From the NCBI RefSeq assembly GCF_030684315.1, contig NC_081370.1, positions 34,242,728 through 34,306,727 of the forward strand: 64,000 nt of DNA, read 5' to 3'. Positions 277 to 36,899 of this stretch are shown here, in pieces. Made by a program: the position numbers and the translations under genes. Under the pieces are notes generated by a model. That model worked only from the letters and a program-made list of their open reading frames with translations. It ran no database searches and was not told where the DNA came from. The number at the start of each line of letters is the position of its first letter. Positions within the stretch are counted from its first letter, which is position 1. This DNA is from Stegostoma tigrinum (taxonomy: Eukaryota).

Positions 277-354
277 AATCACCAGTAACAACTGAATCTC
301 ATCAAAATGCTGCTACGAATAAAGAAGGTGCAGAGGATCAATCAAAACAGAACG
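277..354 (+). CDS. Repeat micro-exon type A, copy 1 (78 nt, phase 1-1): (E/Q)SPVTTESHQNAATNKEGAEDQSKQN
   Basis: T-rich tract + TAG acceptor (274-276), open frame, donor G|GTGCGT, length divisible by 3. Confidence 0.72.
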
Positions 355-1126
355 GTGCGTTATCATGATATAAAAATGTGACTAATTAATAAGTAATTAT
401 TTGGGTGCAAGGCCAGAACTAATGCAAAACTCTGACAAAGGAATTTGACAAAGCCCTTTTAAACTAAGTAAATCGAGTTGACTGTACATATTTAATGGTG
501 CATTATGCATTTTCGGTACCTGCTACATCATTTAACTTCAGTGAGCTTTAACGACATCCAACTTGTACATTGGCTTCTTGCATGAGTAGGTCCTTATATT
601 GTGAGTAGCACAAGTTACTCAAAGACAACATCCAGCTCCTAAACTGACTTACATTGTTACCTCAAAATGGGGTACACACACACATTCCGAAAATAAACTT
701 TTGCTCTGACATTTCAACCAATGGTTAACATGTGTGAGATATAAAGCACTAAGCTTTTCACTAGGTGCAAAATTAGAGATCCAGGTGGAAAAATTAAAAA
801 GGAGCATTGTGCTGTGTTCTGAGGGGAGCACGACGTATTCATGCAGGTATTCAGAAGCTAATAGAAAGAGAGCAGGTGAATTTCAGAATGTTGCTCCAAG
901 CCCATGGATGCTGTTCAGGAAGAACTTTAAAAATCTGACTCAATTTGACCATATGAATGAGTTCATATAGAGAGGGCATCCATGCCAACTACACCATTCA
1001 GCCCATTCACCACATCTCCAACATCTAATTCCCAACAGCCAGCCTTCAAATACAAACTAATGTCATGAACTCCTGAATCACTCACTGAACACAATTTGCA
1101 CACACAACATTAAGCCGTTAAAAGAA

Positions 1127-1262
1127 AAGAGAAATTGCTGGAGAAGCTCACCAGATCTGGTAGCATCGATGAAGAGAAATCAGAGTTAACGTTTTAGGTC
1201 TGGTGGCCAATCCGAGCATCCTCTGTTTTTGTTTCTGCTTTGAAGCACCTGCAGTGCTTTCA
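1127..1262. mobile_element. Old Penelope-type terminal-repeat fragment carried inside the cassette (also ~7374, 13743, 16165, 18883, 21601, 24320, 27243)
   Basis: GAAATTGCTGGAGAAGCTCACCAGATCTGGTAGCATC...CAGAGTTAACGTTT resembles the Penelope terminus at 43915-43985. Confidence 0.55.
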
Positions 1263-1756
1263 ATAGTTTTATTTCATGGCACGTTGTGGCTTTTCACTAC
1301 CTGCTGCATTATTTGACTTCAGTGTGCTTCAACAAAATCCAAATTGTTCATTAGGTCCTTGCAGGAATAGGTCATAAAATTTGAGAAGCACAAATTTTTT
1401 AAGACAATCTCCATCTCCTAGATGGCCTTACATTGTTCCTCTAAAAGGTTGGTGCACACATTTTTGAAATAATCTTGTGCTCTGACTTTTCGACCAGTGG
1501 TTAAAATGTATGACGTAGAATGTACTAACCTTTTCACTCGACACAGAATTAAAGGTCCAGGTAGAGAAATTGAAAAGGAGCAATGTACTGGTATTATAAA
1601 TATTTATCTGAGTGAAGTACCTGATCTAGTACAAAACGATAACGATTGAATTTGATCAAGCCCTGAAGACATTAAAATTCTAACTTGATACCACAATGCC
1701 CAACTCAACCCCTCATCTATCCTAATCTCTTTTCCACATACCTGCCAGCCTACCAT

Positions 1757-2170
1757 TTCACCCACCAGCACTCTATCTCCTCATACACCTCCCATCATCA
1801 CCCCATGCACACCAGTTTCCCATCTCCTCACACACCTACCATCATCACCCTACACCGACCAGCACCCTATCCCCTCACACACCTCCCATCATCACCCTAC
1901 ACCCACCAGCACCCTATCCCCTCACACACCTCCCATCATCACCCTACACCCACCAGCACCCTATCTCCTCACACGCCTCCCATCATCACCCTACATCCAC
2001 CAGCACCCTATCCCCTCACACGCCTCCCATCATCACCCTACACCCACCAGCACCCATATCCCCTCACACGCCTCCCATCATCACCCTACATCCACCAGCA
2101 CCCTATCCCCTCACACACCTCCCATCTTCACCCTACACCCACCAGCACACTATCTCCTCACACACCTCAT
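1757..2170. repeat. 47-bp C-rich minisatellite (~9 copies); also 8004-8417 and truncated 14373-14490
   Basis: Unit CCCTCACACACCTCCCATCATCACCCTACACCCACCAGCACCCTATC. It explains the spurious Pro/His/Thr-rich 168-aa ORFs. Confidence 0.95.
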
Positions 2171-2442
2171 GCCCTAACCCTCAACTTCTGACACTGTAAA
2201 CCCTATACCACTCTGCCCTCAAGAAACACCTTAATTCTGACACAGTAACTGTCCCTGTATTGATCTCCACCCTTCATTCGTATCCTCCAAACATCTGCCA
2301 AACTTCTGCAACTCTCTCCAACTCATTCCTGTACATACTTTGAGCACCTACACTTCCACGCAATGTGTCAGACTGGCTGCTGGATATTTACACCACAGCA
2401 TATAGCACTGACTGCTGTCAATGGAGGCTTGCGTGGAGACTG

Positions 2443-2535
2443 TCTGATGAAGGGTGTAGGCCTGAAACGTCAGCTTTTGTGCTCCTGAGATGCTGCTGGG
2501 CCTGCTGTGTTCGTCCAGCCTCACACTTTATTATA
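2443..2535 (+). mobile_element. Penelope pseudo-LTR fragment with hammerhead core (also 8690-8782)
   Basis: CTGATGAAGGGTGTAGGCCTGAAACGTCAGCTTTTGTGCTCCTGAGATGCTGC, the same family as many other copies in the window. Confidence 0.85.
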
Positions 2536-4208
2536 CTGGCTTGCAACTCATAATGCTTTTCCCCAGTGCAGCCTCCGGTGTTTCCTGGACAGGCTTTTTT
2601 GTGACGGTATGTTTCTGTCCAGGGAAATCCAGTTGAGAAGCTTGAAAAGTGTCAGTGATTAATTTGTTTTTGATCTTTTTGGCAATGGTATCCCCCGCCC
2701 CGATCACAAATTTTAGACCTGCCTGTTAAATTTCCAATCTAGAAATTGAGCAAGTACTTTGACAAATACAGAGAACACTTTTGATGGAATGATGTATTCC
2801 TACATTTGGAGGAAGCAAAACAGGTGAATTTCAGAATTTTGCGCCAAGACCATGAATGCTGTTCTGGAAGACCTTTAATAACCTGATTGTGCCTGAGTTC
2901 ATTTACAAAAGGCATTTCCTGCCAACTGCACCACAAACCATATTTACTACATCTCCATCATCTAACTGCCAATAATCAGTTCTCAAATCTCAATTTACCT
3001 GCTGAACTCATTAATCTCACATTGAACGCTGTGTCAAAACTTACATCCATAACTCAACGCACAAATAGTGGCAGCTTTTCAATGATGTAGAATTCAATGA
3101 TTGTACACTTTTCCAAAATCTTTTATCATCTAAGATGATTGCACAAGAAACAGAGATTTCCCAGAGCTGTGCTTACCTGTGAAAGATGAAAGCAGTTGGT
3201 CATGAATACAGTGCCATTCAACATGCATGACCTTCAATGAAATGTGTACATACCTGACCCGAACCATGACCAGGTTCCTGACAACAATAGCTGTCCTTCT
3301 GGTAGTGACAGCATCAGCACTTAGGAAACTCTGCCCACCAAGATCACTGGGGTCTGTCTGCCTATCTTCTTGCCCCAAACCTACTGACCTCAGGCATAAG
3401 CATAGATACTTCCTGCAGGTGCAGGTTCAGCAATAGTTACCACTGATGATGGGACTGCTGAGACTGCCAATATTGATGGCTGTCTAATAGGACACATGGA
3501 TCTAGATGGACAGGTCATTCTATTTGCAAGATGGCAGCCTCAGCCATCAGCAACCTGGGTGAGAAATTACACCAAAGCTGATTGGTTACTGAATTGTACC
3601 TGTGGGGGACCTCCTTATTCTCTGGAATATCAACCATAAACACACTTCAGCAAGCATTACCCTTTTTGTCCTTGGCACTATTGGTGCCATTCTAGTATCC
3701 ATCATTCAGCACATTCTCATTATGTCAGATTGTTGTGTCGTGAATGTCCCATCCCAGTGCTTGAGCAAATTCCATCTTGGAAACTCCAGAACATCATTAT
3801 TGGAAAGACACATTTTCATAGTTGACATCATTTGGGTAAGTTATAATTCCTGGTAACTCAAATTCAAGAATTGATGACATTTTCATCTGAGAACTCCAGT
3901 AATCTATCTTGTAGAAAAACATTTGATTTGTTCAATGATTTGATCACTTTGAGACATTTTGCAACTGCAGTACAGGACTATTTGAATCACCAAGTTATCG
4001 AGTTCTTCAAAAAATAGCTACTTTGCATTGACTGAGGTAAAAGAAGAATGGGGTGTATATGCACAGTGAGTAGCAGCTCTGCAAAGATAGAGACAATATT
4101 AATGCAGCATTAATCTGAAAACTGGTATAATATATCTTGAGGTAAATTTGTAAAGATCTTATGTTACTAGGTTTACCCTGACTATCTTGTATCTTTATGA
4201 TGATGTAG

Positions 4209-4289
4209 AATCACAAGAGGTCTCTGAAAGTCAACAAAGTCATACTTGGGATACAAAACAAGATACAGAGAATCAGTCATTAGAGAAAC
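4209..4289 (+). CDS. Repeat micro-exon type B, copy 1 (81 nt, phase 1-1): ESQEVSESQQSHTWDTKQDTENQSLEK
   Basis: TGATGATGTAG acceptor, open frame, consensus donor C|GTAAGT, homologous to exon A. Confidence 0.75.
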
Positions 4290-5565
4290 GTAAGTTGCTA
4301 CAATTTAAAAGTGTGACCGATTAAGAAATTGTCTGGGTGCAATACCTGATCTAATGCAATACTCTCACACTGGAATTGAATCATTGCCTGCTAAATTGGT
4401 ACAGGTCTGACAGTATGTGTTTAATTCTTGTCTCTGGATCACAGGCTGTGCTGTACCATTTGCTACCTGCTGACTTACTTGATTTCAGGATGCTGCCAAT
4501 GATATCCATGTTGTTCATTGGATGCATGCATTAGCAGAACCTTTTATTGTGCGAGGCTAAAGTTACTTAAAGACAATCTCCAGCTCTGATAGGAGGAGTT
4601 GTTATTGCAAAAATTAGTGCACTCAGTTGCAAAATAAACTTATGCTCTGATGCTTTGACCAAAAGTTAACTGTGTGAGGTAGCATCCAGTGAAGTCTTTC
4701 AGGAGGCTCAGAACTAGAGAACTAGGGTCAGCTATGAAAGAAGAAAGCCCTTCGGCCAGAAGTCAGTGCCATTGAACATACGTGAACTCAGTTGGATATA
4801 TGAATAGATTCTATCTAGCCCATGAACAGGCTGTTTAGTAGCTAAAGGCATCCCGAAGGCAGTGACAGCATCAGCATTCTGGGCAACCTCAGCCCTTTAA
4901 GATCACCACGGTCAAATGGGAGAAAGGTTGTCTCCTTGCGAAATGATGGCCTCGACCATGAGCAACACTGGGTCCTACATTGCACCAAAGTAGATTTATT
5001 TATAACGTTGCAGCTGGGGGATGACCTCCCTACTCATCAGAATATTCAAACCCAAATATCCTTTGGAAAGGATCTCCTATTTGATTTGTTTGCACTACTG
5101 ATGCGAATCTAATGTCCACCATTCAGCACTTGTCCTATGTGTCAGATCATTCTGTGCTGATCTCCATTCTCAGTTCTAAGGCAACAAATGCAATGATCAA
5201 TCCTTGCAACTAACTGTATGATTTGTACAATGATTTGACCACTTCAAGACATTTCACATGTGCACACCAGGACCATTTGAATCACTGATACATAGAATTC
5301 TTCAAAGAATAATTGTCCGAGGTAAATGTATAGCATCAACAGAAGCACAGGACAAATGACACACAGTGAGCAGCAGCTCTGCAATACTTCAGAGAAAATT
5401 AACGCAGCACTCATAAGAAGATTTGCCTCATCTGTGCATAGATGTATTTGGACTGAGCTCAAATGAACGTGCGAACTACGTGAACGCACAAAATCATTTT
5501 CACTGCGGTTTCTACTTGCTTATGTAGCTGAGTTTATGCTATCTTGTATTTTTGTGATGATATAG

Positions 5566-5647
5566 AAACACTGATCATTGCTGAGCATGAACAAAGCATT
5601 GCTACAAATACAAAAAAAAGACACAGAGGATCACTCAAAAGGGAAAG
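5566..5647 (+). pseudogene. Decayed micro-exon type C, copy 1 (82 nt)
   Basis: Acceptor TAG intact, but +1 A in an A-run shifts the frame and the donor position reads AAAG|ATAGAT (GT lost). Confidence 0.65.
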
Positions 5648-6523
5648 ATAGATGCAATTATTTAAAACTAAGTGCAATTAAAAATAATTATCTGAATGAA
5701 ACAGGTGATCTAATACAAAACTGTAATGATTGAATCTGTTGAAGCCCTGGAAAATTTGGATGGAGATGACAGTGTGATTTAATTCCTGACTTTGCATGAC
5801 AGACACACTGCACATTTTTCTTGGCTGCTAACTTCACTTTTCTGCCAATGAAATGCATTCTGTTAATTGAATTCAAGTATCAGCAGGGCCTTATATTGCC
5901 AGAAGGAGAAGTTACCAAAACCAAATCTCCATTTCATACAGTGGCCTCGTATAGTTACTGCACAGACTGGAGAAATCCTTTTGAAAATAAAATTCTGCTC
6001 TGGCCTGATTAACATCCGCCACGTTATTCAAAACATGCAGGATACAAGTACAGTTCAGAGAATATTTCCCCTTTTGATCCTTTGCACAATTGGTACAACT
6101 GTTACGGACATCATTCCACTCGTTTCTCTCTGTGGCAGAGTCAAATTGTTGGGTGATGCACTTGCATTCCAGTGCTTGAGCAAATTTGGTTTAGTAACCT
6201 CCAGAACATCAATGTTGAAAAGATACATTTTCATAGATAACATCACAATCAGGCAAGATGACATTTCCGATTTGTCAACATCAAGAACTGCTTACTTTTT
6301 AACCTGAGTTCTGTCCCTCCAGAAAACAACATGGGTTGTACAATGATTTGACCACTTTCCAATATTGTGCAAGTTCATTCCAGGTTATTTGAATCACCAA
6401 ACTATTGCATTCATTGTACTGATCTCAAGGTAACATGTGTGAATGTCATTCTTGCACAAAAGCACTACTCTCTTATATTACTGGGCTTACTCTGCACATC
6501 TTGTATTTTTTATTATGATGTAG

Positions 6524-6601
6524 AATCACCAGTAACAACTGAATCTCATCAAAATGCTGCTACGAATAAAGAAGGTGCAGAGGATCAATCAAAACAGAAC
6601 G
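6524..6601 (+). CDS. Repeat micro-exon type A, copy 2
   Basis: Identical to 277-354 including splice sites. Confidence 0.72.
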
Positions 6602-9600
6602 GTGCGTTATCATGATATAAAAATGTGACTAATTAATAAGTAATTATTTGGGTGCAAGGCCAGAACTAATGCAAAACTCTGACAAAGGAATTTGACAAAG
6701 CCCTTTTAAACTAAGTAAATCGAGTTGACTGTACATATTTAATGGTGCATTATGCATTTTCGGTACCTGCTACATCATTTAACTTCAGTGAGCTTTAACG
6801 ACATCCAACTTGTACATTGGCTTCTTGCATGAGTAGGTCCTTATATTGTGAGTAGCACAAGTTACTCAAAGACAACATCCAGCTCCTAAACTGACTTACA
6901 TTGTTACCTCAAAATGGGGTACACACACACATTCCGAAAATAAACTTTTGCTCTGACATTTCAACCAATGGTTAACATGTGTGAGATATAAAGCACTAAG
7001 CTTTTCACTAGGTGCAAAATTAGAGATCCAGGTGGAAAAATTAAAAAGGAGCATTGTGCTGTGTTCTGAGGGGAGCACGACGTATTCATGCAGGTATTCA
7101 GAAGCTAATAGAAAGAGAGCAGGTGAATTTCAGAATGTTGCTCCAAGCCCATGGATGCTGTTCAGGAAGAACTTTAAAAATCTGACTCAATTTGACCATA
7201 TGAATGAGTTCATATAGAGAGGGCATCCATGCCAACTACACCATTCAGCCCATTCACCACATCTCCAACATCTAATTCCCAACAGCCAGCCTTCAAATAC
7301 AAACTAATGTCATGAACTCCTGAATCACTCACTGAACACAATTTGCACACACAACATTAAGCCGTTAAAAGAAAAGAGAAATTGCTGGAGAAGCTCACCA
7401 GATCTGGTAGCATCGATGAAGAGAAATCAGAGTTAACGTTTTAGGTCTGGTGGCCAATCCGAGCATCCTCTGTTTTTGTTTCTGCTTTGAAGCACCTGCA
7501 GTGCTTTCAATAGTTTTATTTCATGGCACGTTGTGGCTTTTCACTACCTGCTGCATTATTTGACTTCAGTGTGCTTCAACAAAATCCAAATTGTTCATTA
7601 GGTCCTTGCAGGAACAGGTCATAAAATTTGAGAAGCACAAATTTTTTAAGACAATCTCCATCTCCTAGATGGCCTTACATTGTTCCTCTAAAAGGTTGGT
7701 GCACACATTTTTGAAATAATCTTGTGCTCTGACTTTTCGACCAGTGGTTAAAATATATGACGTAGAATGTACTAACCTTTTCACTCGACACAGAATTAAA
7801 GGTCCAGGTAGAGAAATTGAAAAGGAGCAATGTACTGGTATTATAAATATTTATCTGAGTGAAGTACCTGATCTAGTACAAAACGATAACGATTGAATTT
7901 GATCAAGCCCTGAAGACATTAAAATTCTAACTTGATACCACAATGCCCAACTCAACCCCTCATCTATCCTAATCTCTTTTCCACATACCTGCCAGCCTAC
8001 CATTTCACCCACCAGCACTCTATCTCCTCATACACCTCCCATCATCACCCCATGCACACCAGTTTCCCATCTCCTCACACACCTACCATCATCACCCTAC
8101 ACCGACCAGCACCCTATCCCCTCACACACCTCCCATCATCACCCTACACCCACCAGCACCCTATCCCCTCACACACCTCCCATCTTCACCCTACACCCAC
8201 CAGCACCCTATCCCCTCACACGCCTCCCATCATCACCCTACATCCACCAGCACCCTATCCCCTCACACGCCTCCCATCATCACCCTACACCCACCAGCAC
8301 CCATATCCCCTCACACGCCTCCCATCATCACCCTACATCCACCAGCACCCTATCCCCTCACACACCTCCCATCTTCACCCTACACCCACCAGCACACTAT
8401 CTCCTCACACACATCATGCCCTAACCCTCAACTTCTGACACTGTAAACCCTATACCACTCTGCCCTCAAGAAACACCTTAATTCTGACACGGTAACTGTC
8501 CCCGTATTGATCTCCACCCTTCATTCGTATCCTCCAAACATCTGCCAAACTTCTGCAACTCTCTCCAACTCATTCCTGTACATACTTTGAGCACTTACAC
8601 TTCCACGCAATGTGTCAGACTGGCTGCTGGATATTTACACCACAGCATATAGCACTGACTGCTGTCAATGGAGGCTTGCGTGGAGACTGTCTGATGAAGG
8701 GTGTAGGCCTGAAACGTCAGCTTTTGTGCTCCTGAGATGCTGCTGGGCCTGCTGTGTTCGTCCAGCCTCACACTTTATTATACTGGCTTGCAACTCATAA
8801 TGCTTTTCCCCAGTGCAGCCTCCGGTGTTTCCTGGACAGGCTTTTTTGTGACGGTATGTTTCTGTCCAGGGAAATCCAGTTGAGAAGCTTGAAAAGTGTC
8901 AGTGATTAATTTGTTTTTGATCTTTTTGGCAATGGTATCCCCCGCCCCGATCACAAATTTTAGACCTGCCTGTTAAATTTCCAATCTAGAAATTGAGCAA
9001 GTACTTTGACAAATACAGAGAACACTTTTGATGGAATGATGTATTCCTACATTTGGAGGAAGCAAAACAGGTGAATTTCAGAATTTTGCGCCAAGACCAT
9101 GAATGCTGTTCTGGAAGACCTTTAATAACCTGATTGTGCCTGAGTTCATTTACAAAAGGCATTTCCTGCCAACTGCACCACAAACCATATTTACTACATC
9201 TCCATCATCTAACTGCCAATAATCAGTTCTCAAATCTCAATTTACCTGCTGAACTCATTAATCTCACATTGAACGCTGTGTCAAAACTTACATCCATAAC
9301 TCAACGCACAAATAGTGGCAGCTTTTCAATGATGTAGAATTCAATGATTGTACACTTTTCCAAAATCTTTTATCATCTAAGATGATTGCACAAGAAACAG
9401 AGATTTCCCAGAGCTGTGCTTACCTGTGAAAGATGAAAGCAGTTGGTCATGAATACAGTGCCATTCAACATGCATGACCTTCAATGAAATGTGTACATAC
9501 CTGACCCGAACCATGACCAGGTTCCTGACAACAATAGCTGTCCTTCTGGTAGTGACAGCATCAGCACTTAGGAAACTCTGCCCACCAAGATCACTGGGGT

Positions 9601-10455
9601 CTGTCTGCCTATCTTCTTGCCCCAAACCTACTGACCTCAGGCATAAGCATAGATACTTCCTGCAGGTGCAGGTTCAGCAATAGTTACCACTGATGATGGG
9701 ACTGCTGAGACTGCCAATATTGATGGCTGTCTAATAGGACACATGGATCTAGATGGACAGGTCATTCTATTTGCAAGATGGCAGCCTCAGCCATCAGCAA
9801 CCTGGGTGAGAAATTACACCAAAGCTGATTGGTTACTGAATTGTACCTGTGGGGGACCTCCTTATTCTCTGGAATATCAACCATAAACACACTTCAGCAA
9901 GCATTACCCTTTTTGTCCTTGGCACTATTGGTGCCATTCTAGTATCCATCATTCAGCACATTCTCATTATGTCAGATTGTTGTGTCGTGAATGTCCCATC
10001 CCAGTGCTTGAGCAAATTCCATCTTGGAAACTCCAGAACATCATTATTGGAAAGACACATTTTCATAGTTGACATCATTTGGGTAAGTTATAATTCCTGG
10101 TAACTCAAATTCAAGAATTGATGACATTTTCATCTGAGAACTCCAGTAATCTATCTTGTAGAAAAACATTTGATTTGTTCAATGATTTGATCACTTTGAG
10201 ACATTTTGCAACTGCAGTACAGGACTATTTGAATCACCAAGTTATCGAGTTCTTCAAAAAATAGCTACTTTGCATTGACTGAGGTAAAAGAAGAATGGGG
10301 TGTATATGCACAGTGAGTAGCAGCTCTGCAAAGATAGAGACAATATTAATGCAGCATTAATCTGAAAACTGGTATAATATATCTTGAGGTAAATTTGTAA
10401 AGATCTTATGTTACTAGGTTTACCCTGACTATCTTGTATCTTTATGATGATGTAG

Positions 10456-10536
10456 AATCACAAGAGGTCTCTGAAAGTCAACAAAGTCATACTTGGGATA
10501 CAAAACAAGATACAGAGAATCAGTCATTAGAGAAAC
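10456..10536 (+). CDS. Repeat micro-exon type B, copy 2
   Basis: Identical to 4209-4289; AG/GTAAGT. Confidence 0.75.
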
Positions 10537-11934
10537 GTAAGTTGCTACAATTTAAAAGTGTGACCGATTAAGAAATTGTCTGGGTGCAATACCTGATCTA
10601 ATGCAATACTCTCACACTGGAATTGAATCATTGCCTGCTAAATTGGTACAGGTCTGACAGTATGTGTTTAATTCTTGTCTCTGGATCACAGGCTGTGCTG
10701 TACCATTTGCTACCTGCTGACTTACTTGATTTCAGGATGCTGCCAATGATATCCATGTTGTTCATTGGATGCATGCATTAGCAGAACCTTTTATTGTGCG
10801 AGGCTAAAGTTACTTAAAGACAATCTCCAGCTCTGATAGGAGGAGTTGTTATTGCAAAAATTAGTGCACTCAGTTGCAAAATAAACTTATGCTCTGATGC
10901 TTTGACCAAAAGTTAACTGTGTGAGGTAGCATCCAGTGAAGTCTTTCAGGAGGCTCAGAACTAGAGAACTAGGGTCAGCTATGAAAGAAGAAAGCCCTTC
11001 GGCCAGAAGTCAGTGCCATTGAACATACGTGAACTCAATTGGATATATGAATAGATTCTATCTAGCCCATGAACAGGCTGTTTAGTAGCTAAAGGCATCC
11101 CGAAGGCAGTGACAGCATCAGCATTCTGGGCAACCTCAGCCCTTTAAGATCACCACGGTCAAATGGGAGAAAGGTTGTCTCCTTGCGAAATGATGGCCTC
11201 GACCATGAGCAACACTGGGTCCTACATTGCACCAAAGTAGATTTATTTATAACGTTGCAGCTGGGGGATGACCTCCCTACTCATCAGAATATTCAAACCC
11301 AAATATCCTTTGGAAAGGATCTCCTATTTGATTCGTTTGCACTACTGATGCGAATCTAATGTCCACCATTCAGCACTTGTCCTATGTGTCAGATCATTCT
11401 GTGCTGATCTCCATTCTCAGTTCTAAGGCAAATTCCATCATGGAACCTCCAGTACACCATGATTGAAAAGATACAGTTTGGCAGTTGAAATCACTTGGGG
11501 AAAGTAAAATTTCTGTCTTCTCAAATTCAAGACTTGATTGGCGTTTTCTGACAAAAATGCAATGATCAATCCTTGCAACTAACTGTATGATTTGTACAAT
11601 GATTTGACCACTTCAAGACATTTCACATGTGCACACCAGGACCATTTGAATCACTGATACATAGAATTCTTCAAAGAATAATTGTCCGAGGTAAATGTAT
11701 AGCATCAACAGAAGCACAGGACAAATGACACACAGTGAGCAGCAGCTCTGCAATACTTCAGAGAAAATTAACGCAGCACTCATAAGAAGATTTGCCTCAT
11801 CTGTGCATAGATGTATTTGGACTGAGCTCAAATGAACGTGCGAACTACGTGAACGCACAAAATCATTTTCACTGCGGTTTCTACTTGCTTATGTAGCTGA
11901 GTTTATGCTATCTTGTATTTTTGTGATGATATAG

Positions 11935-12016
11935 AAACACTGATCATTGCTGAGCATGAACAAAGCATTGCTACAAATACAAAAAAAAGACACAGAGGAT
12001 CACTCAAAAGGGAAAG
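11935..12016 (+). pseudogene. Decayed micro-exon type C, copy 2
   Basis: Same lesions as 5566-5647. Confidence 0.65.
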
Positions 12017-18118: not shown

Positions 18119-20755
18119 GTGCATTACCATTATTTAAAAATGCGGCCAATTAATCGGTAATTTTTGTGTGCAAGACCAGAACCAAAGCAAAGCTCTGACA
18201 ACGCAATTCGGCAAAGCTCTTTTAAATTGATGTAAATTGAGATGACCGTATGTGTTTCATGTCATGTTGTGGCTTTTCACTACCTGCTGCATTATTTGAC
18301 TTCAGTGTGCTTCAACAAAATCCAAATTGTTCATTAGGTCCTTGCAGGAATAGGTCGTAAAATTAGAGAAGCACAAGTTACTTAAAGGCAATCTCCAGCT
18401 CCTAAATGGCCTTACATTGTTCCTGCAAAAATTGGTGAACAAGTTCCTGAAATAATCTTGTGCTCTGAGTTTTCGACCAGTGGTTAAAATGTATGACGTA
18501 GAATGTACTAAGCTTTTCACGCGACACAGATTTAAAGATCAGGTAGAGAAATTGAAAAGGAGCAATGTACTGTGTTGTGAGTGGAGCGCGAAGTATTCAC
18601 ACAGGTGTTTAGAAGCTAATAGAAAGAGAGCAGATGAATTTCAGAAGGTTGTACCAAGGCCATGAATAATGTTCAGAGACAACATTGAGTGAGATTGTTC
18701 ATCTGTCCATGTGACTGGATTCATGTCGAGAGTTCATCGATGCCAACTACACCATTCATCTCATTCACCACATCCACATCATCTGATGCGCAGCAATCAG
18801 CCATCAAATACAAACTTGTATCATGAACTCCTGAATCATCACTGAACAGAATTTGCACACACAACATCCAGCCCGTAAACGAAAAGAGATGTTGCTGGAC
18901 AAGATCACCAGATCTGGTAACATCGGTGAAGAGACATCAGAGTTAAGATTTCAGATCCGGCGGGCATTTCAAGCATCTTCTGATTTAGTTTCTGCTTTGA
19001 TGCAGCTGCAGTGCTTTTGAATTTTGTCATGTGATTAAACACTACGTTTTTCATCCATGTATGAATATTTGATGATTTGATACAATTGGTCAAAGTAGAG
19101 AGATTTCCCAGAGCTGTGGCTAACTCGGAAAAGATCAATGCGTTTGGTCCAGAAATCAGTGCCGTTCAAGATCAACGGAGACAACAGGAGATGATATAGA
19201 GTACCTCCCTGAGCAACGACCAGATTCCCAGTGTAAAAACCATCCTGATGCCACTCATGAACAGAGTCGATTGGGTGACAGGTTGGTCTCCTTGCAAAAT
19301 GACAGCATTAGCCATCAGCAATAATGGTTCCTACGTTACACCAAGGCAGGTTTACTTACCACTTTGGAGCTGGTGGATTTCCTCCCTATTCTCCAGAACA
19401 TTCAAAGCGGAACGCGCTTCAGACAGCATTTCTCCTTTATGTCCTTTGCGCAACTGGTGAAAATCTTACGTCCATCATCAGCACATTCTCTCTCAGTCGG
19501 ATGGTTGTATGGTGTTTTCTTATCCCAGAGCAAATTTCACCTTTGAAATACCGGAACATCATGATTAAACGGATGCAGTTTCACAGTTGAAATCATTTGG
19601 GAAGGTAAAATTCCTTATTTTGTAAATTGAAGAACTGCTTTCATTTTCACCTGAGAATTCCACTGATCAATCTTGACACGCAACTACATGGTTTGTACAA
19701 TGAGTCAAACACATTAAGATATTTTACAAATGCGTGCCAGGACCAAACAAACCAATCTGAAGAGGATGATTCAAACAAGCAAGGTTAGATGCTCTGATTT
19801 AAAAGTGTGAATAATTATAAGCTGGTATTATAAATATTTATCTGAGTGAAGCAGCTGATCTAGTGCAAAATGATAACGATTGAATTTGATCAAGCCCTGG
19901 AAAATTATTGACACGGCTGTATGTTTTAATCGTTGCTTTTTCATGGTAAGACACACTGTGCATTTTTGCTCCCTGCTGACACACAGCAGACCACAGTTTT
20001 CTGTCAATGAAATGCATTCTGTTCATTGGCTTCATGAAGCAGCAGGACCTTATATTGCAAGGAGTAAAAGTTAGCAAAACACAATCCCCAACTGGTACGG
20101 TGGCATCATATTGTTACTGCTAAGTTATCCACAGCTCTGGGAAATCACTGTACTTTGACCAATGATGTCAAATTGTGGAGAAATTCTTTTGAAATTGAAA
20201 TTCTACTCTGACCTGTTGACGACCATCCTGTTTTTCACAAAATGCAAGACATAAGTACAGTTCAGAGAATATTACCTCTTTTGGTGCTTTGCACAATTGC
20301 GACAAGTATTATAGACATCATTCCGCACTTTTCTCTGTGTGTCAGAGATAGATTGTTGGTTGTGTGATGACGTTGCATTCCCGTCCTTGAGCAAATTTGG
20401 TTTTGGAAACTTCAGAACATCACTGTTGAAAAGATGTATTTTCATCGATCACACACAGTCAGGCAAGACGTCATTTCACGTTTGTGAACATCAAGAACTG
20501 GTTGCAATTTAACCTGAGAAATCCACTGTCCCTTATATCCAGAAAACAGCATGAATTGTACAATGATTTGACTACGATACGATATGCAGCAAGTTCATTC
20601 CGGGACACTTGAATCACCAAATGATTGCATTCATTGTACTGAGCTCAAGTTAACATGTGAAGTTCATTCTTGCACAAAATTGCTGTTCGGGCTGTTTTTA
20701 CTCCCATATATTACGGAGCTTACTCTGCACATCTTTTATTTTTGTTATGATGTAG

Positions 20756-20836
20756 AACCACCGGCGCCGACTGAAAATCATCAAAATTCTGCTCCGCATA
20801 CAGAAGAAAGTGAACAGCTTGAATCGGAACAGAACG
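20756..20836 (+). CDS. Repeat micro-exon type D, copy 3
   Basis: Same as 15319-15399. Confidence 0.72.
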
Positions 20837-23473
20837 GTGCGTTATCATTATTTAAAAATGCGGCCAATTAATCGGTAATTTTTGTGTGCAAGACCAGAAC
20901 CAAAGCAAAGCTCTGACAACGCAATTCGGCAAAGCTCTTTTAAATTGATGTAAATTGAGATGACCGTATGTATTTCATGTCATGTTGTGGCTTTTCACTA
21001 CCTGCTGCATTATTTGACTTCAGTGTGCTTCAACAAAATCCAAATTGTTCATTCGGTCCTTGCAGGAATAGGTCGTAAAACTAGAGAAGCACAAGTTATT
21101 AAAGGCAATCTCCAGCTCCTAAATGGTCTTACATTGTTCCTGCAAAAATTGGTGCACACGTTCCTGAAATAATCTTGTGCTCTGAGTTTTCGACCAGTGG
21201 TTAAAATGTATGACGTAGAATGTACTAACCTTTTCACTCGACACAGAATTAAAGGTCCAGGTAGAGAAATTGAAAAGGAGCAATGTATTGTGTTGTGAGT
21301 GGAGCGCGAAGTATTCACACAGGTGTTTAGAAGTTAATAGAAAACGAGCAGATGAATTTCAGAAGGTTGTACCAAGGCCATGAATAATGTTCAGGGAGAA
21401 CATTGAGTGAGATTGTTCATCTGTCCATGTGACTGGATTCATGTCGAGAGTTCATCGATGCCAACTACACCATTCATCTCATTCACCACATCCACATCAT
21501 CTGATGCGCAGCAATCAGCCATCAAATACAAACTTGTATCATGAACTCCTGAATCATTACTGAACAGAATTTGCACACACAACATCCAGCCCGTAAACGA
21601 AAAGAGATGTTGCTGGACAAGATCACCAGATCTGGTAACATCGGTGAAGAGACATCAGAGTTAAGATTTCAGATCCGGCGGGCATTTCAAGCATCTTCTG
21701 ATTTAGTTTCTGCTTTGATGCAGCTGCAGTGCTTTTGAATTTTGTCATGTGATTAAACACTACGTTTTTCATCCATGTATGAATATTTGATGATTTGATA
21801 CAATTGGTCAAAGTAGAGAGATTTCCCAGAGCTGTGGCTAACTCGGAAAAGATCAATGCGTTTGGTCCGGAAATCAGTGCCGTTCAAGATCAACGGAGAC
21901 AACAGGAGATGATATAGAATACCTCCCTGAGCAACGACCAGATTCCCAGTGTAAAAACCATCCTGATGCCACTCATGAACAGAGTCGATTGGGTGACAGG
22001 TTGGTGTCCTTGCTAAATGACAGCATTAGCCATCAGCAATAATGGTTCCTACGTTACACCAAGGCAGGTTTACTTACCACTTTGGAGCTGGTGGATTTCC
22101 TCCCTATTCTCCAGAACATTCAAAGCGAAACGCGCTTCAGACGGCATTTCTCCTTTATGTCCTTTGCGCAACTGGTGAAAATCTTACGTCCATCATCAGC
22201 ACATTCTCTCTCAGTCGGATGGTTGTATGGTGTTTTCTTATCCCAGAGCAAATTTCACCTTTGACATACCGGAACATCATGATTAAACAGATGCAGTTTC
22301 ACAGTTGAAATCATTTGGGAAGGTAAAATTCCTTATTTTGTAAATTGAAGAACTGCTTTCATTTTCACCTGAGAATTCCACTGATCAATCTTGACACGCA
22401 ACTACATGGTTTGTACAATGAGTCAAACACATTAAGATATTTTACAAATGCGTGCCAGGACCAAACAAACCACTCTGAAGAGGATGATTCAAACAAGCAA
22501 GGTTAGATGCTCTGATTTAAAAGTGTGAATAATTATAAGCTGGTATTATAAATATTTATCTGAGTGAAGCAGCTGATCTAGTGCAAAACGATAACGATTG
22601 AATTTGATCAAGCCCTGGAAAATTATTGACACGGCTGTATGTTTTAATCGTTGCTTTTTCATGGTAAGACACACTGTGCATTTTTGCCCCCTGCTGACAC
22701 ACAGCAGACCACAGTTTTCTGTCAATGAAATGCATTCTGTTCATTGGTTTCATGAAGCAGCAGGACCTTATATTGCAAGGAGTAAAAGTTAGCAAAACAC
22801 AATCCCCAACTGGTACAGTGGCATCATATTGTTACTGCTAAGTTATCCACAGCTCTGGGAAATCGCTGTACTTTGACCAATGATGTCAAATTGTGGAGAA
22901 ATTCTTTTGAAATTGAAATTCTACTCTGACCTGTTGACGACCATCCTGTTTTTCACAAAATGCAAGACATAAGTACAGTTCAGAGAATATTACCTTTTTT
23001 GGTGCTTTGCACAATTGCTACAAGTATTATAGACATCATTCCGCACTTTTCTCTGTGTGTCAGAGATAGATTGTTGGTTGTGTGATGACGTTGCATTCCC
23101 GTCCTTGAGCAAATTTGGTTTTGGAAACTTCAGAACATCACTGTTGAAAAGATGTATTTTCATCGATCACACACAGTCAGGCAAGACGTCATTTCACGTT
23201 TGTGAACATCAAGAACTGGTTGCAATTTAACCTGAAAAATCCACTGTCCCTTATATCCAGAAAACAGCATGAATTGTACAATGATTTGACTACGATACGA
23301 TATGCAGCAAGTTCATTCCGGGACACTTGAATCACCAAATGATTGCATTCATTGTACTGAGCTCAAGTTAACATGTGAAGTTCATTCTTGCACAAAATTG
23401 CTGTTCGGGCTGTTTTTACTCCCATATATTACGGAGCTTACTCTGCACATCTTTTATTTTTGTTATGATGTAG

Positions 23474-23554
23474 AACCACCGGCGCCGACTGAAAATCATC
23501 AATATTCTGCTCCACATACAGAAGAAAGTGAACAGCTTGAATCGGAACAGAACG
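23474..23554 (+). CDS. Repeat micro-exon type D, copy 4 (N>Y variant)
   Basis: AG...G|GTGCGT, AAT>TAT plus one synonymous change. Confidence 0.72.
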
Positions 23555-25451
23555 GTGCGTTATCATTATTTAAAAATGCGGCCAATTAATCGGTAATTTT
23601 TGTGTGCAAGACCAGAACCAAAGCAAAGCTCTGACAACGCAATTCGGCAAAGCTCTTTTAAATTGATGTAAATTGAGATGACCGTATGTATTTCATGTCA
23701 TGTTGTGGCTTTTCACTACCTGCTGCATTATTTGACTTCAGTGTGCTTCAACAAAATCCAAATTGTTCATTAGGTCATTGCAGGAATAGGTCGTAAAACT
23801 AGAGAAGCACAAGTTACTTAAAGGCAATCTCCAGCTCCTAAATGGCCTTACATTGTTCCTGCAAAAATTGGTGCACACGTTCCTGAAATAATCTTGTGCT
23901 CTGAGTTTTCGACCAGTGGTTAAAATGTATGACGTAGAATGTACTAACCTTTTCACTCGACACAGAATTAAAGGTCCAGGTAGAGAAATTGAAAAGGAGC
24001 AATGTACTGTGTTGTGAGTGGAGCGCGAAGTATTCACACAGGTGTTTAGAAGCTAATAGAAAGAGAGCAGATGAATTTCAGAAGGTTGTACCAAGGCCAT
24101 GAATAATGTTCAGGGAGAACATTGAGTGAGATTGTTCATCTGTCCATGTGACTGGATTCATGTCGAGAGTTCATCGATGCCAACTACACCATTCATCCCA
24201 TTCACCACATCCACATCATCTGATGCGCAGCAATCAGCCATCAAATACAAACTTGTATCATGAACTCCTGAATCATCATTGAACAGAATTTGCACACACA
24301 ACATCCAGCCCGTAAACGAAAAGAGATGTTGCTGGACAAGATCACCAGATCTGGTAACATCGGTGAAGAGACATCAGAGTTAAGATTTCAGATCCGGCGG
24401 GCATTTCAAGCATCTTCTGATTTAGTTTCTGCTTTGATGCAGCTGCAGTGCTTTTGAATTTTGTCATGTGATTAAACACTACGTTTTTCATCCATGTATG
24501 AATATTTGATGATTTGATACAATTGGTCAAAGTAGAGAGATTTCCCAGAGCTGTGGCTAACTCGGAAAAGATCAATGCGTTTGGTCCAGAAATCAGTGCC
24601 GTTCAAGATCAACGGAGACAACAGGAGATGATATAGAATACCTCCCTGAGCAACGACCAGATTCCCAGTGTAAAAACCATCCTGATGCCACTCATGAACA
24701 GAGTCGATTGGGTGACAGGTTGGTCTCCTTGCAAAATGACAGCATTAGCCATCAGCAATAATGGTTCCTACGTTACACCAAGGCAGGTTTACTTACCACT
24801 TTGGAGCTGGTGGATGACCTCCCTATTCTCCAGAACATTCAAAGCGAAACGCGCTTCAGACGGCATTTCTCCTTTATGTCCTTTGCGCAACTGGTGAAAA
24901 TCTTACGTCCATCATCAGCACATTCTCTCTCAGTCGGATGGTTGTATGCTGACTTCTCATCCCAGACCTCGAGCAAATTGCCGCTTGTAAGTGCCAGAAT
25001 ATTTCAATTAAACAGATGCAGTTTCACAGTTGAAATTCTTTCAGACAAGGTAAATTTCCATGTTTCACCAATTCAATCTTTACACCCAACTGCGTGGTTT
25101 GTAAAATGATTTGGCCACTTTAATATATTTTATAAATGCATGCCGGGACCATTTGAATCACCAAGTTGTTTGAATTGCTCAATGAATAGTTGCCACATTT
25201 AAATGCATGGTGTCCAATGAAGAATGGGACGTGATACACACAGTGAGCAGCAGCAGCTCTGCAATAACTGTGAGAACATTAATGCAGCACCTGTCTGAAA
25301 ATAGGTCTCACTGTTTCATAGATATTGTTGGCCTGAGCTTAACTGAACATGTGTGCAATTTATGGTCAAACAGAAGCATCATCACCGCAGTTTCTACTTT
25401 CTTATGCACCTGTGCTTTAGCTGTCCAACTTCTATTTTGGCGATGATATAG

Positions 25452-25532
25452 GCTCTGTGGATGATGCCATGAATACACAAAGTAATGCCATGAATACAAA
25501 CCAAGCTGAAGAGGATGATTTGAACAAGCTAC
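25452..25532 (+). pseudogene. Decayed micro-exon type E (xSVDDAMNTQSNAMNTNQAEEDDLNKL), donor lost
   Basis: TAG acceptor and open 81-nt frame, but followed by ACATTA rather than GT. Confidence 0.6.
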
Positions 25533-26449: not shown

Positions 26450-26530
26450 AATTACAGGAAGTCTGTGAAACTCATTAAGTTTCTTCTGGGGATAGAAAAG
26501 AAGGTGTAGATGAAGAATAAAAAGAGATAG
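26450..26530 (+). pseudogene. Micro-exon type F with two in-frame TAA stops (ELQEVCETH*VSSGDRKEGVDEE*KEI)
   Basis: CAG acceptor and G|GTATTT donor retained; 81 nt; two stops in the homologous frame. Confidence 0.68.
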
Positions 26531-29483: not shown

Positions 29484-29512
29484 ATCTATTTTGTTATTTT
29501 ATGATGATGCAG

Positions 29513-29593
29513 AATTACAGGAAGATTCTGAAAATCATCAAGATACTGTTGGGAACGGAAAAGAAAATGCAGTGGATCACTTGACAGAGAAAG
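29513..29593 (+). pseudogene. Micro-exon type G (ELQEDSENHQDTVGNGKENAVDHLTEK), donor GT>CT
   Basis: CAG acceptor, open 81-nt frame, donor position reads AAG|CTGAGT. Confidence 0.65.
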
Positions 29594-30406
29594 CTGAGTT
29601 GCCACAATGTAAAAATATGAAAAATTAAAATGTAATTGGGTGCAAAACCTGATCTAATGCAAAACTCTGACTGTGGAATTTGGTCAAGACCTGGTAACCT
29701 GGTATTGAAATAACAGTGCATATAATCCTTGCCTGTGCATCAGAGGGGCACAATATGTTTTTGCTACCAGCTACACTACTTGATTTCAGTGTGCTGAAAT
29801 TCATGTTGTTCATTTGCTGCATGCATCAGCAGGTCCTTATATTTTGAGAGGGAACAGCTACTTCAAGACATTGCCCAAATCCTGTAATGCCCTTATTTTG
29901 CCAGTGCCAAAATGGGGCACATATTTCGAAAATAAAGTTGTGTTCTGACACGTAGAACAATGATTGAAATATGTTAGCCACCGTACACCGCATTATTGAT
30001 TAGGCAGAGAATTTGAGGTCGAGGTAAATGACTTAAAAACGAGAAATCTGCTGTGTTTTGAGGGGTGAACATGGAATCCAAACAGATGTTTAGAAGCAGG
30101 TGGAAGCAGAGCAGGTGAATGTCAGAGTTTTGTTCCAAGATCATGAATGCTGTATAGGAAGACATTTAACAATCTCACTCATATCGTCAATGTGCCTGAG
30201 TTCAACTTCAACATAAATTATCTTCAAAGTCTGGCATATTTTCCTTTTAACACAAGTTGTTACCCGCAGTTCAAAAGACATAGTTCCCAGTTTTTACATC
30301 TCCGAACCAAAATCGAAGTGTGCCCTGCAGGCAGCATCACAGTGAAGCAGTTTGGGAGGAGTGTCCTACAGTGAAGAATCCTGGTAAGAGTGTCGATAAA
30401 AAGGGG

Positions 30407-30748
30407 TGTTATGGTGGCTCAGTGATTAGCATTGCTGCCTCATAGCACCAGGACTCAGGTTTAATTCTATCCTTGGGCGATGGCGTGGAGTTTGCATCTT
30501 CTCCGTGTGTCTGTAAGGGTTTCCACCAGTGCTTCACTTTCCTCCCACAGTCCAGAGATGTGCAAGTTAGGTGGATCAGACTTGCCCATAGTGTGCGGTG
30601 ACATGCTTGTTAGGTGGATCAACCATGGAAAATGCTGGGTTACAGGCCTAGAGTAGAGGTGTGGGTCTAGGTGGGATGCTATTCAGAGGATTGGTGCGGA
30701 CCTGATGGGCTGAACAGCCTGCTTCCACACTAGAGAATCTAAGATTGA
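30407..30748 (+). mobile_element. HE1-type tRNA-derived shark SINE
   Basis: A-box-like TGGCTCAGTGATTAGC, then GTGGAGTTTGCA..TTCTCC..GTGTCTG, CTCCCACAGTCCA..GATGTGC..GTTAGGTGGAT, and a CR1-derived 3' tail. Confidence 0.85.
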
Positions 30749-31417
30749 TAAAAGAATAAAACAAAAGTAATGAAAAATTAGTGATTGTTTTAGCATACCT
30801 CCACCATCAAAACGTGAAGTATCATTTCTTTAAAAATGTATTTCTCGCCCAGGTTAATCCCACTTAAACACTCAAACAAACACAAACTCTCAGCACTTCA
30901 TTCTTCCTCCCAACTTACTTTTCATCACTATTCAAAGTGCCTGGTCACAAACTCAAATTTGCAACAGTTTATATTCAGAATAAAGCATCAGCAATTACTT
31001 TTTCCTTCCTGGCAATATGTACACTTTTTTTTGTTAAATGGTTGTAGTTCCACACACCAGCTTAATGATCTTGCAGTCTTATTTTAAAGTCATTCCTCAA
31101 ACGTTAATAGATCATAATCTGTTCAGTTTTAAACTTCCAATGTTGAATATAAACTTTGAAAGTGACAGCAAAGGATGTTCTATTCTATTCTATTCTTTTC
31201 GATTCTACTGTCAGTGTTGAACAGCTAACACCACAAATACTCCTTTTTCATTAGCACGTTACTAACTTTGATGTCGATTCAGCTTTTTTGAAAAAAATAA
31301 AACAAGGGCTTCTTCATTCCAGCCTCATGATCTGACAGGAAATTTGTCAAATTCCCAAATTGCTACAGTCTCCTGTTAATTTAAATGTTCTGTTCAAATG
31401 AAGTGCCTTTAATACAG

Positions 31418-31645
31418 GATAACAAAGCATGGAGCTGGATGAACACAGCAGGCCAAGCTCTTAGGAGCACAAAAGCTGACGTTTCGGGCCTAGACCCTTC
31501 ATCAGACCCTTTTTCTGATGAAGGGTCTAGGCCCGAAACGTCAGCTTTTGTGCTCCTGAGATGCTGCTTGGCCTGCTGTGTTCATCCAGCTCCACACTTT
31601 GTTATCTTGGATTCTCCAGCATCTGCAGTTCCCATTATCACTGTT
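31418..31645. mobile_element. Short Penelope-derived element of two inverted pseudo-LTRs
   Basis: ~90-bp inverted arms around a 9-nt spacer; TSD TTTAATACAG(G) at 31408 and 31646. Confidence 0.88.
31515..31542 (+). ncRNA. Minimal hammerhead ribozyme motif (mirror copy at 31478-31505 on -; another intact copy at 63553-63580 on -)
   Basis: CUGAUGA, stem II GGGU/GCCC, GAAAC, GUC. This is the minimal hammerhead known from Penelope terminal repeats. Confidence 0.7.
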
Positions 31646-31837
31646 TTTAATACAGGTTCATTCATTAAAATTGTTTTTAGCTTTTCAAAGACTGCTCAGC
31701 ATTGTGTAAGCCATACCACTTCTGTTTAGTTTCGTAACAACTTAGTCAAAGATACTAAAATTAATTACAAACTTTCAATAAAATCTGTTCATGTTAAAAT
31801 TTGAGGATGCCTGTTCATATTTTGTTTCTCCATACAG

Positions 31838-31854
31838 GGAATGATTCAAGTTAA
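31838..31854 (+). CDS. Candidate terminal coding exon of the micro-exon gene: (G)GG AAT GAT TCA AGT TAA = GNDSS*
   Basis: Good acceptor TTTTGTTTCTCCATACAG; phase-1 entry gives a short frame ending in TAA; AT-rich UTR-like sequence follows. Confidence 0.5.
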
Positions 31855-36850: not shown

Positions 36851-36899
36851 TGAGAGAAAAAGGAGAACACAAGAGGAGTGATAGAAAAAATGTGCCCTG

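What the first reader, a model, noticed from the sequence alone, without database searches (positions are those of the whole stretch)
277..31854. Hidden expanding array of symmetric micro-exons inside what looks like a macrosatellite
Seen: each cassette has a T-rich tract + (TGA)TGATRYAG followed by exactly 78 or 81 nt (82 in type C). Nine of them are open in phase 1 and closed by GT, in the order A-B-A-B-A-D-D-D-D, followed by a phase-1 stop exon (GNDSS*). The peptides share a rough consensus ExxxxxExHQ...E-D/N-Q-S...N/K. Splice sites, length modulo 3 and frame are kept across exon types whose flanking introns have diverged substantially. Established: phase 1-1 exons can be duplicated or skipped without frameshift. 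Inference: this is the 3' end of a gene with an acidic, probably disordered C-terminal region whose length is set by genomic copy number of intron-exon cassettes, and possibly by exon skipping. The ORF track misses it.
Basis: partly seen in the sequence, partly recalled or inferred. Interest (0 to 1): 0.88.

Follow-up and report, generated by a model that had tools for sequence, protein, structure and literature searches.

The report
Repeated tail exons, shark B7-H6-like gene
The "macrosatellite" is a tandem array of intron-exon cassettes that most likely encode the repetitive acidic C-terminal tail of a shark B7-H6-like (NK-cell-ligand-type) immune gene, so unit duplication changes tail length; splicing could not be checked with RNA here.

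Summary
Nine AG...GT-bounded segments of 78 or 81 nt sit at homologous positions in 6,247-bp units (99.8% identical) and 2,718-bp units (97-98%). All are open in phase 1-1, in the order A-B-A-B-A-D-D-D-D. Degenerate cassettes C, E, F and G also occur, and a 17-nt stop exon lies at 31838-31854.

The next gene in the window (41-64 kb, + strand) is B7-H6/NCR3LG1-like, and all six of its exons are phase 1-1 and end in G. The whale-shark orthologue ends in a 27-residue segment that aligns in register with cassette B (shuffle P<1e-5). Ray, skate and catshark relatives carry tandem acidic 25-30-residue repeats at the same C-terminal position. The array is therefore most likely the tail of the upstream paralogue.

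Caveats:
- No RNA run exists for this organism.
- The exons are no better conserved than the introns, and dN/dS is about 1 or higher.
- The bare AG-78/81-GT open pattern is common by chance.
- The 5' part of the gene lies outside the window.

The scan had already noted the same architecture on adjacent DNA (s1-882122, s1-881639, s1-881473).

The closest described analogue is the chicken BG gene tail, encoded by 21-nt exons.

The parts
1..14489 (+). 2.3 copies of a 6,247-bp unit (cassettes A, degenerate x, B, C), 99.8% identical. The window starts inside a unit.
   Evidence: self-BLAST
277..354 (+). cassette exon A1, 78 nt, phase 1-1, AG...GTGCGT
4209..4289 (+). cassette exon B1, 81 nt, phase 1-1, AG...GTAAGT. 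Homologous to the last 27-residue tail segment of whale-shark NCR3LG1-like P0001.
5566..5647 (+). cassette C1, dead: 82 nt (frameshift) and no GT donor
6524..6601 (+). cassette exon A2, identical to A1
10456..10536 (+). cassette exon B2, identical to B1
11935..12016 (+). cassette C2, dead, identical to C1
12893..12970 (+). cassette exon A3, identical to A1
14490..25151 (+). about 3.9 copies of a 2,718-bp unit (cassette D plus a weak 75-nt candidate), 97-98% identical
15319..15399 (+). cassette exon D1, 81 nt, phase 1-1, AG...GTGCGT
18038..18118 (+). cassette exon D2 (one Glu>Gly change, donor GTGCAT)
20756..20836 (+). cassette exon D3, identical to D1
23474..23554 (+). cassette exon D4 (one Asn>Tyr change and one silent change)
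25452..25532 (+). cassette E, positional homologue of C. Open, but the donor is lost.
26450..26530 (+). cassette F, dead: two in-frame stops. Its peptide still resembles the whale-shark tail segment (shuffle P=1e-4).
29513..29593 (+). cassette G: open, but the canonical donor is CT. A GTAAAA 15 nt further on would give a 96-nt phase 1-1 exon, so its status is uncertain.
31838..31854 (+). candidate terminal coding segment (GNDSS-stop in phase 1) behind a strong pyrimidine tract plus CAG
   Evidence: inferred, not verified
31855..32795 (+). candidate 3' UTR, with AATAAA at 32730 and 32772
   Evidence: inferred

Best explanation
The array is the 3' part of a B7-H6 (NCR3LG1)-like immunoglobulin-superfamily gene. 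Its leader, V, C1 and membrane exons lie upstream of the window.

In this elasmobranch family every exon is in phase 1-1 and ends in G. Behind the membrane exon, modules can therefore be added, lost or skipped without breaking the frame.

Here the modules are 78/81-nt exons that begin with AA, so the junction codon is G|AA = Glu, or C|AA = Gln after B. Each encodes 26-27 acidic, Ser/Thr/Gln-rich residues with few hydrophobic ones. These segments are presumably disordered.

Unequal crossing-over between kb-sized units has recently multiplied the cassettes: an A-x-B-C unit 2.3 times and a D unit 4 times. If all nine intact exons are spliced, this window alone contributes about 245 residues with a net charge of about -45, ending in GNDSS.

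Shown: the repeat structure, intact splice signals and frame, homology of cassette B/F to an annotated coding tail segment, and the family architecture.

Inferred: that the cassettes are spliced in this species, the link to an upstream Ig gene, the terminal exon, and the role of the tail.
For: Structure and frame.

The acceptor block is the best conserved part of the cassette, at 82% over all types against 60-68% in the flanks. The exon is almost free of indels. The acceptor motif is confined to the array: 9 hits against 0 expected.

Only the coding frame is open in A, B, G and E.

The downstream gene's exons were found by tblastn with P0001-P0003: leader 41092-41145, V 46275-46616, C1 47074-47412, TM 48510-48629, cytoplasmic exon ending at 55990, and a domain exon 62816-63226. 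All are phase 1-1 and end in G before GT.

P0001 residues 293-319 align with cassette B from the first to the last residue of the exon: 10/27 identical, BLASTP E=5e-5, tblastn. None of 100,000 composition-preserving shuffles reached the score, and F gave P=1e-4.

Relatives P0003-P0015 carry tandem acidic C-terminal repeats: 26 residues (Mobula x7, Hemitrygon x2), 30 (Rhinoraja x5) and 25 (Scyliorhinus torazame). Several isoforms exist per gene.

Scan note s1-882122 (unchecked lead) describes an Ig receptor in the preceding window whose tail macrosatellite runs into bases 1-2000 here.
Against: There is no transcript evidence. The only runs holding this DNA are DNA-like contigs.

There is no sign of purifying selection on the peptides. 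dN/dS is 0.8-3.2. A-D exon divergence is 24% against 20% in the intron, P=0.39. Three-way identity across units A, D and F (F being a dead cassette) is 0.55 for the exon against 0.70 for the rest.

Open-frame retention is only weakly improbable under neutrality, at 0.23-0.45 per lineage.

A profile of the exon peptides found nothing among 1.84 billion proteins.

There is no in-register similarity to the ray repeats.

Four of the seven cassette types are damaged.

The 5' part of the gene and the terminal exon could not be checked.
Confidence: 0.7

Rival explanations
1. Relic array. The cassettes descend from B7-H6-like tail exons but are no longer part of a mature mRNA. Either the tail belongs to a pseudogene, or most units are skipped. 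On this view the frame and splice sites survive only because the duplications are young.
For: - dN/dS is 1 or higher, and the exons are not better conserved than the introns.
- Neutral retention of an open frame is not very improbable.
- The amplified units carry dead cassettes (C) along with intact ones, so amplification is not exon-driven.
- No RNA data are available.
- No annotated protein matches the profile.
Against: - The three types with intact donors are exactly the three with intact frame and length, although they are 26-42% diverged from one another.
- The acceptor block is the most conserved segment.
- Relatives demonstrably use such repeats in annotated proteins.
Confidence: 0.2
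2. Chance. This would be a non-coding macrosatellite in which short AG...GT open stretches recur only because the unit is repeated.
For: AG-78/81-GT open segments are frequent: 47 on the + strand and 60 on the - strand in 32 kb. The copies within each type are near-identical, so nine copies amount to only three independent observations.
Against: - Cassette B matches an annotated coding tail segment in register (P<1e-5).
- The phase and junction base are identical to those of the neighbouring gene's exons.
- The same cassette position is kept in seven unit types.
Confidence: 0.05
3. Non-coding host-gene array (SNORD116/Bsr type). Short non-coding exons would alternate with introns that carry small RNAs. 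The TGATGA in the 'acceptor' would be a C box, and the conserved CTGA a D' or D box.
For: The introns are at least as conserved as the exons. TGATGA lies just upstream of the AG, and CTGA occurs at +15 and about +150 in several types.
Against: - No Rfam family reaches its gathering score anywhere in the window.
- The C-box-like hexamer is imperfect in the most amplified types, A and D.
- No terminal stem was seen by eye in the aligned flanks (no fold was run).
- The protein-level homology of the exon is unexplained under this reading.
Confidence: 0.02

Closest known systems
Annotated elasmobranch B7-H6/NCR3LG1-like proteins (whale shark P0001; Hemitrygon P0003; Mobula P0004-P0007, P0015; Scyliorhinus torazame P0008-P0013; Mustelus P0010; Rhinoraja P0014)
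   Same: - V-C1-TM ectodomain gene family, arranged in tandem.
- C-terminal region built from modules.
- Tandem acidic repeats of 25-30 residues (26 in rays), each starting with Glu.
- The whale-shark tail segment is homologous to cassette B.
- Many isoforms per gene.
   Different: - Only cassettes B and F show sequence similarity, and only to the whale-shark protein. The ray repeats are not alignable.
- No relative in the searched length range carries this A/B/D series.
- These entries are automatic predictions, mostly named 'uncharacterized'.
- No paper describing their tails was found.
Chicken BG genes (butyrophilin/B7 relatives), PMC5938342 and PMC4046983
   Same: An Ig-V membrane protein of the wider B7/BTN group whose long cytoplasmic tail is encoded by many small symmetric exons. 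The first codon of each exon is split 1+2 between exons. Exon number varies between genes and haplotypes, and tail variation appears selected.
   Different: - BG exons are 21 nt (one heptad) and form a coiled coil. Here the exons are 78/81 nt, contain proline, are acidic, and show no heptad pattern.
- BG introns are short, by my own recollection. Here the introns are 2-4 kb and form a macrosatellite of 97-99.8% identical units.
Exon-bearing intragenic macrosatellites such as LPA kringle IV-2, NBPF Olduvai triplets, DMBT1 and the titin PEVK segment (own knowledge, not tested here)
   Same: kb-sized head-to-tail units, each carrying complete symmetric exon(s), so that unit copy number sets protein length.
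   Different: The genes and protein modules differ. In those cases the modules are folded domains or PEVK motifs, and their expression is documented.

Membership tests
Elasmobranch B7-H6/NCR3LG1-like genes with a modular tail | Leader, V-set, C1-set and TM exons upstream of the tail modules in the same gene | not testable with these tools
   The 5' part lies upstream of base 1. The only pointer is an unchecked scan note (s1-882122). The next gene downstream has this layout.
Elasmobranch B7-H6/NCR3LG1-like genes with a modular tail | All exons in phase 1-1, with the last base (G) shared with the next codon | tested here: met
   Six exons of the downstream gene end in G before GT. Cassettes A and D end in G and B ends in C. 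All begin with two bases that complete a codon.
Elasmobranch B7-H6/NCR3LG1-like genes with a modular tail | Sequence homology of a cassette to an annotated tail segment | tested here: met
   B against P0001 residues 293-319: in register, E=5e-5, shuffle P<1e-5. F gives P=1e-4. A and D are tied to B only through DNA homology of the cassettes.
Elasmobranch B7-H6/NCR3LG1-like genes with a modular tail | Tandem acidic repeats of about 25-30 residues at the C-terminus | tested here: met
   The cassette peptides are 26-27 residues with net charge -3 to -7. Relatives have periods of 26, 30 and 25.
Elasmobranch B7-H6/NCR3LG1-like genes with a modular tail | The cassettes are spliced into mRNA | not testable with these tools
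   No RNA run is held for this organism. Read laying returned DNA contigs only.
Chicken BG-type tail | 21-nt exons encoding heptads of a coiled coil | tested here: not met
   The exons are 78/81 nt. The peptides have only 1-4 hydrophobic residues, up to 4 prolines, and no 7-residue period.
snoRNA/lncRNA host-gene tandem array | An intronic or exonic small-RNA module recognisable as a C/D, H/ACA or miRNA family | tested here: not met
   cmscan of the whole window against Rfam 15 at gathering score gave 0 matches.
Exon-bearing intragenic macrosatellite | Head-to-tail kb-sized units of high identity, each with a complete symmetric exon | tested here: met
   6,247-bp units at 99.8% identity and 2,718-bp units at 97-98%, each with 78/81-nt phase 1-1 exons.

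The most novel reading that the evidence does not exclude
In sharks the tail of an NK-ligand-type (B7-H6-like) membrane protein is a copy-number-variable string of acidic modules. Unequal crossing-over in an intragenic macrosatellite would give individuals tails of different length and module order. The modules themselves would be evolving at or above the neutral rate because the tail, not only the ectodomain, is under diversifying pressure, for example from pathogen factors that bind it. The two sequenced samples differ in the depth ratio of D to A-B-C units (about 1.6 against about 2.05). That is compatible with such variation but is far from proof.
Probability: 0.25. Interest if true: 0.7.

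Novelty: new variant of a known kind. Interest (0 to 1): 0.5.

Why it matters
B7-H6 is the ligand of NKp30, and the scan's notes on this genome report arrays of genes resembling both. If the tails of these ligands are built from freely duplicable phase 1-1 cassettes, then protein length and composition can change by simple unequal recombination and by exon choice.

That mode of variation has so far been described in detail only for chicken BG genes. An example in cartilaginous fish, with a different module, would suggest that modular tail-exon arrays may be an old or recurrent property of the B7/butyrophilin group.

It also gives annotators a concrete case of coding exons hidden inside a repeat that masking would remove. 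The finding does not open a new category of biology. The family already exists as automatic protein predictions in other elasmobranchs.

Tried and rejected
- **RNA evidence.** The look-up of sequencing runs on 23401-33400 returned only four DNA-like runs from one study. The joint 14281>14490 with 25 extra letters is simply the D-to-D unit junction (17182-17206), not a structural variant.
- **Profile search.** A profile of the exon peptides against 1.84 billion proteins gave 0 hits. Pfam found nothing on the cassette ORFs.
- **Local HMM.** An HMM of the cassette peptides against relatives P0001-P0015 gave nothing significant. In-register tests against the ray repeats gave P>0.07.
- **snoRNA-host idea.** Rejected.
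- **Conservation argument.** Rejected as evidence. The exons are not better conserved than the introns, and the AG-78/81-GT open pattern is common.
- **Papers not held.** PMC3709836 and PMC4594805, on B7H6/NKp30 evolution.
- **Joined model.** The joined spliced model was neither built nor searched.
Full report
**What is in the sequence**

The window has no N runs. Self-BLAST resolves 1-31.8 kb into three layers of one ancestral unit, all on the + strand:
- 2.3 copies of a 6,247-bp unit at 1-14489, 99.8% identical;
- about 3.9 copies of a 2,718-bp unit at 14490-25151, 97-98% identical;
- older single units up to about 31 kb, 65-78% identical to the others.

Every unit carries one or more cassettes at homologous positions. 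Each cassette is a T-rich tract, then TGATGTAG or a close variant, then a purine-rich segment.

- A (78 nt) at 277, 6524 and 12893;
- B (81 nt) at 4209 and 10456;
- D (81 nt) at 15319, 18038, 20756 and 23474.

Each is preceded by AG and followed by GT: GTGCGT for A and D, GTAAGT for B. Each is open when the first two bases complete a codon and the last base starts one.

The other types are damaged:
- C is 82 nt and has no GT.
- E has lost its donor.
- F has two stops.
- G has CT at the donor. A GTAAAA 15 nt further on would still give a 96-nt phase 1-1 exon.

At 31838 a strong pyrimidine tract plus CAG precedes a segment that reads GNDSS-stop in phase 1. AATAAA signals follow at 32730 and 32772.

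**Is it more than chance?**

The bare pattern is not. AG, then 78 or 81 nt open in that phase, then GT occurs 47 times on the + strand and 60 times on the - strand of the same 32 kb. Copies within a type are near-identical, so the nine exons are only three independent observations.

Three things are non-random:
- The same position is kept in seven unit types.
- The 20 nt before the AG are the best conserved block of the cassette: 82% over all pairs and 90% among A, B and D, against 60-72% in the flanks.
- The acceptor motif occurs nine times in the array and nowhere else, with none in shuffles.

The three types that keep a good donor are exactly the three that keep frame and length.

**What selection signatures say**

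The exons have diverged at least as much as the introns.
- Over all type pairs the exon is 59.5% identical, against 68% for the next 114 nt of intron.
- Three-way identity across units A, D and F is 0.55 for the exon and 0.70 for the rest. That places the exon in the lowest 3.6% of windows.
- Most of that excess comes from the dead F copy. For the two intact types A and D the exon is 24% diverged against 20% for the intron (P=0.39).
- Pairwise dN/dS is 0.8-3.2.
- Simulated neutral substitution leaves the frame open in 23-45% of trials per lineage.

Within this window, then, there is no evidence of purifying selection on the peptide. The only constraints seen are on length (few indels, all in threes among the intact types) and on the acceptor.

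**What gene it is**

A V-set ORF at 46.1-46.7 kb (Pfam V-set) led to a whale-shark protein annotated as natural cytotoxicity triggering receptor 3 ligand 1-like. This is P0001, 322 residues, 89% identical in the V domain.

tblastn with P0001 and two relatives places a complete gene head on the + strand of the window:
- leader, 41092-41145;
- V, 46275-46616;
- C1, 47074-47412;
- TM, 48510-48629;
- a 57-nt cytoplasmic exon ending at 55990;
- a 411-nt exon at 62816-63226, which matches a post-membrane domain of stingray protein P0003 (E=2e-33).

All six exons are in phase 1-1 and end in G before GT. That is exactly the junction rule of the cassettes.

The last 30 residues of P0001 are a 27-residue segment followed by three residues and the stop. 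The 27-residue segment aligns from first to last residue with cassette B:
- 10 of 27 residues are identical, and BLASTP gives E=5e-5;
- tblastn hits both B copies;
- none of 100,000 composition-preserving shuffles reaches the score;
- the dead cassette F gives P=1e-4.

A wider search with P0003 found relatives of 480-873 residues in Mobula, Hemitrygon, Rhinoraja, Mustelus and Scyliorhinus torazame. Their C-terminal parts consist of one or more copies of the about-140-residue domain, plus tandem acidic repeats with these periods:
- 26 residues (Mobula x7, Hemitrygon x2);
- 30 residues (Rhinoraja x5);
- 25 residues (S. torazame).

Several isoforms are listed per gene. The ray repeats are not alignable to A, B, D or G. 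That resemblance is one of architecture, not of sequence.

**Interpretation**

The array lies upstream of the leader of the gene at 41 kb and ends with its own stop exon and poly(A) signals. It therefore belongs to the preceding gene of a tandem cluster. The window starts inside a unit, so the gene head is outside it.

Scan notes, which are unchecked AI leads, report the following:
- The preceding window holds an Ig receptor whose tail is a 6.4-kb macrosatellite running into bases 1-2000 here (s1-882122).
- The following genes have the same modular tails (s1-881639, s1-881473, s1-882169).

I could confirm only the parts that lie in this window.

If all nine intact exons are used, the window contributes 240 codons plus five. 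The junction codon is Glu, or Gln after B. Net charge is about -45, and there are very few hydrophobic residues. The segment is probably disordered.

Because a TM exon precedes such tails in relatives, the tail is cytoplasmic by standard topology. Because every exon is phase 1-1, an isoform that skips the TM exon would be secreted. This is not decidable here.

**Rivals**

- Relic array, no longer spliced. This remains the main rival (0.2), given the lack of RNA and of purifying selection.
- snoRNA-host reading. The TGATGA in the acceptor and the conserved CTGA motifs prompted it. It found no support: no Rfam match, and the protein homology would be left unexplained.
- Pure chance. This is excluded by the in-register match to P0001.

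**Limits**

- No RNA run exists for this organism in the index. My one search used a 10-kb query, which can hide a small RNA.
- Read laying gave only DNA contigs. These showed no variants in the exons. The depth ratio of D to A-B-C units differed between the two samples (about 1.6 against about 2.05). The tool itself warns that this depth is not a copy number.

**Comparison and novelty**

The closest described system is the chicken BG gene tail. It has many 21-nt exons with the first codon split 1+2, variable exon number and selected tail variation (PMC5938342; PMC4046983).

The present array shares the logic but not the module. Its exons are 78/81 nt, acidic and without heptads, and its kb-sized introns form a macrosatellite.

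As a genomic object it resembles LPA KIV-2 or NBPF-type exon-bearing macrosatellites (my own knowledge).

The protein family is present in databases as uncharacterised predictions. I found no paper describing its tails.

Verdict: a real and probably coding feature, and a new variant of a known kind. Interest is moderate.

Noticed in passing
window 41092-63226 (+): The head of a B7-H6/NCR3LG1-like gene: leader 41092-41145, V 46275-46616, C1 47074-47412, TM 48510-48629, a 57-nt cytoplasmic exon ending at 55990, and a 411-nt exon at 62816-63226. All are phase 1-1. The V domain is 89% identical to whale-shark P0001. The gene's tail runs off the window.
   Followed up: partly
window 62816-63226 (+): This exon encodes an about-140-residue domain with no Pfam match. 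It is 45% identical to residues 297-435 of stingray P0003 (E=2e-33). In relatives the domain lies after the TM segment and is repeated up to four times in Scyliorhinus torazame proteins.
   Followed up: partly
window 16482-16556, 19200-19274, 21918-21992, 24637-24711 (+): Each D unit holds a second AG...GT segment of 75 nt, open in phase 1-1, behind GATGATATAG. It has almost no pyrimidine tract, so it is probably a decayed cassette rather than a used exon.
   Followed up: no
window 1759-2168 and 8006-8412; truncated copy ending at 14489: A C-rich 47-bp minisatellite (about 8.7 copies, 90% matches) sits inside the A-to-B intron of each 6.2-kb unit. The third copy is cut off where the D-unit array begins.
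   Followed up: no
window 29513-29608 (+): Cassette G lost its canonical donor (CT) but has GTAAAA 15 nt downstream. That gives a 96-nt open phase 1-1 segment whose last base T, joined to the terminal exon, would read Trp. This may be a rescued exon.
   Followed up: no
window 26450-26530 versus its flanks: Cassette F has flanks of the A/D type (about 80% identical), but an exon of the B/G type that is 33-41% diverged from A and D (P=0.003 and 0.0004 against the intron). This suggests a mosaic origin, or gene conversion that stopped at the exon.
   Followed up: partly
window 31960-32095 and 32948-33075 (+): About 130 nt at the start of the candidate 3' UTR is repeated about 1 kb downstream.
   Followed up: no
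window 58161-61129 (-) and 33998-40014: Reverse-transcriptase/LINE-like ORFs lie on the minus strand inside the long intron of the downstream gene. A scan note flags an ERV-like element between the array and the next gene.
   Followed up: no
window 10400-16399, runs X1 versus X2-X4: The contig depth ratio of D units to A-B-C units is about 1.6 in sample S1 and about 2.05 in sample S2. This is a weak hint of unit copy-number difference. The tool warns that this depth is not a copy number.
   Followed up: no
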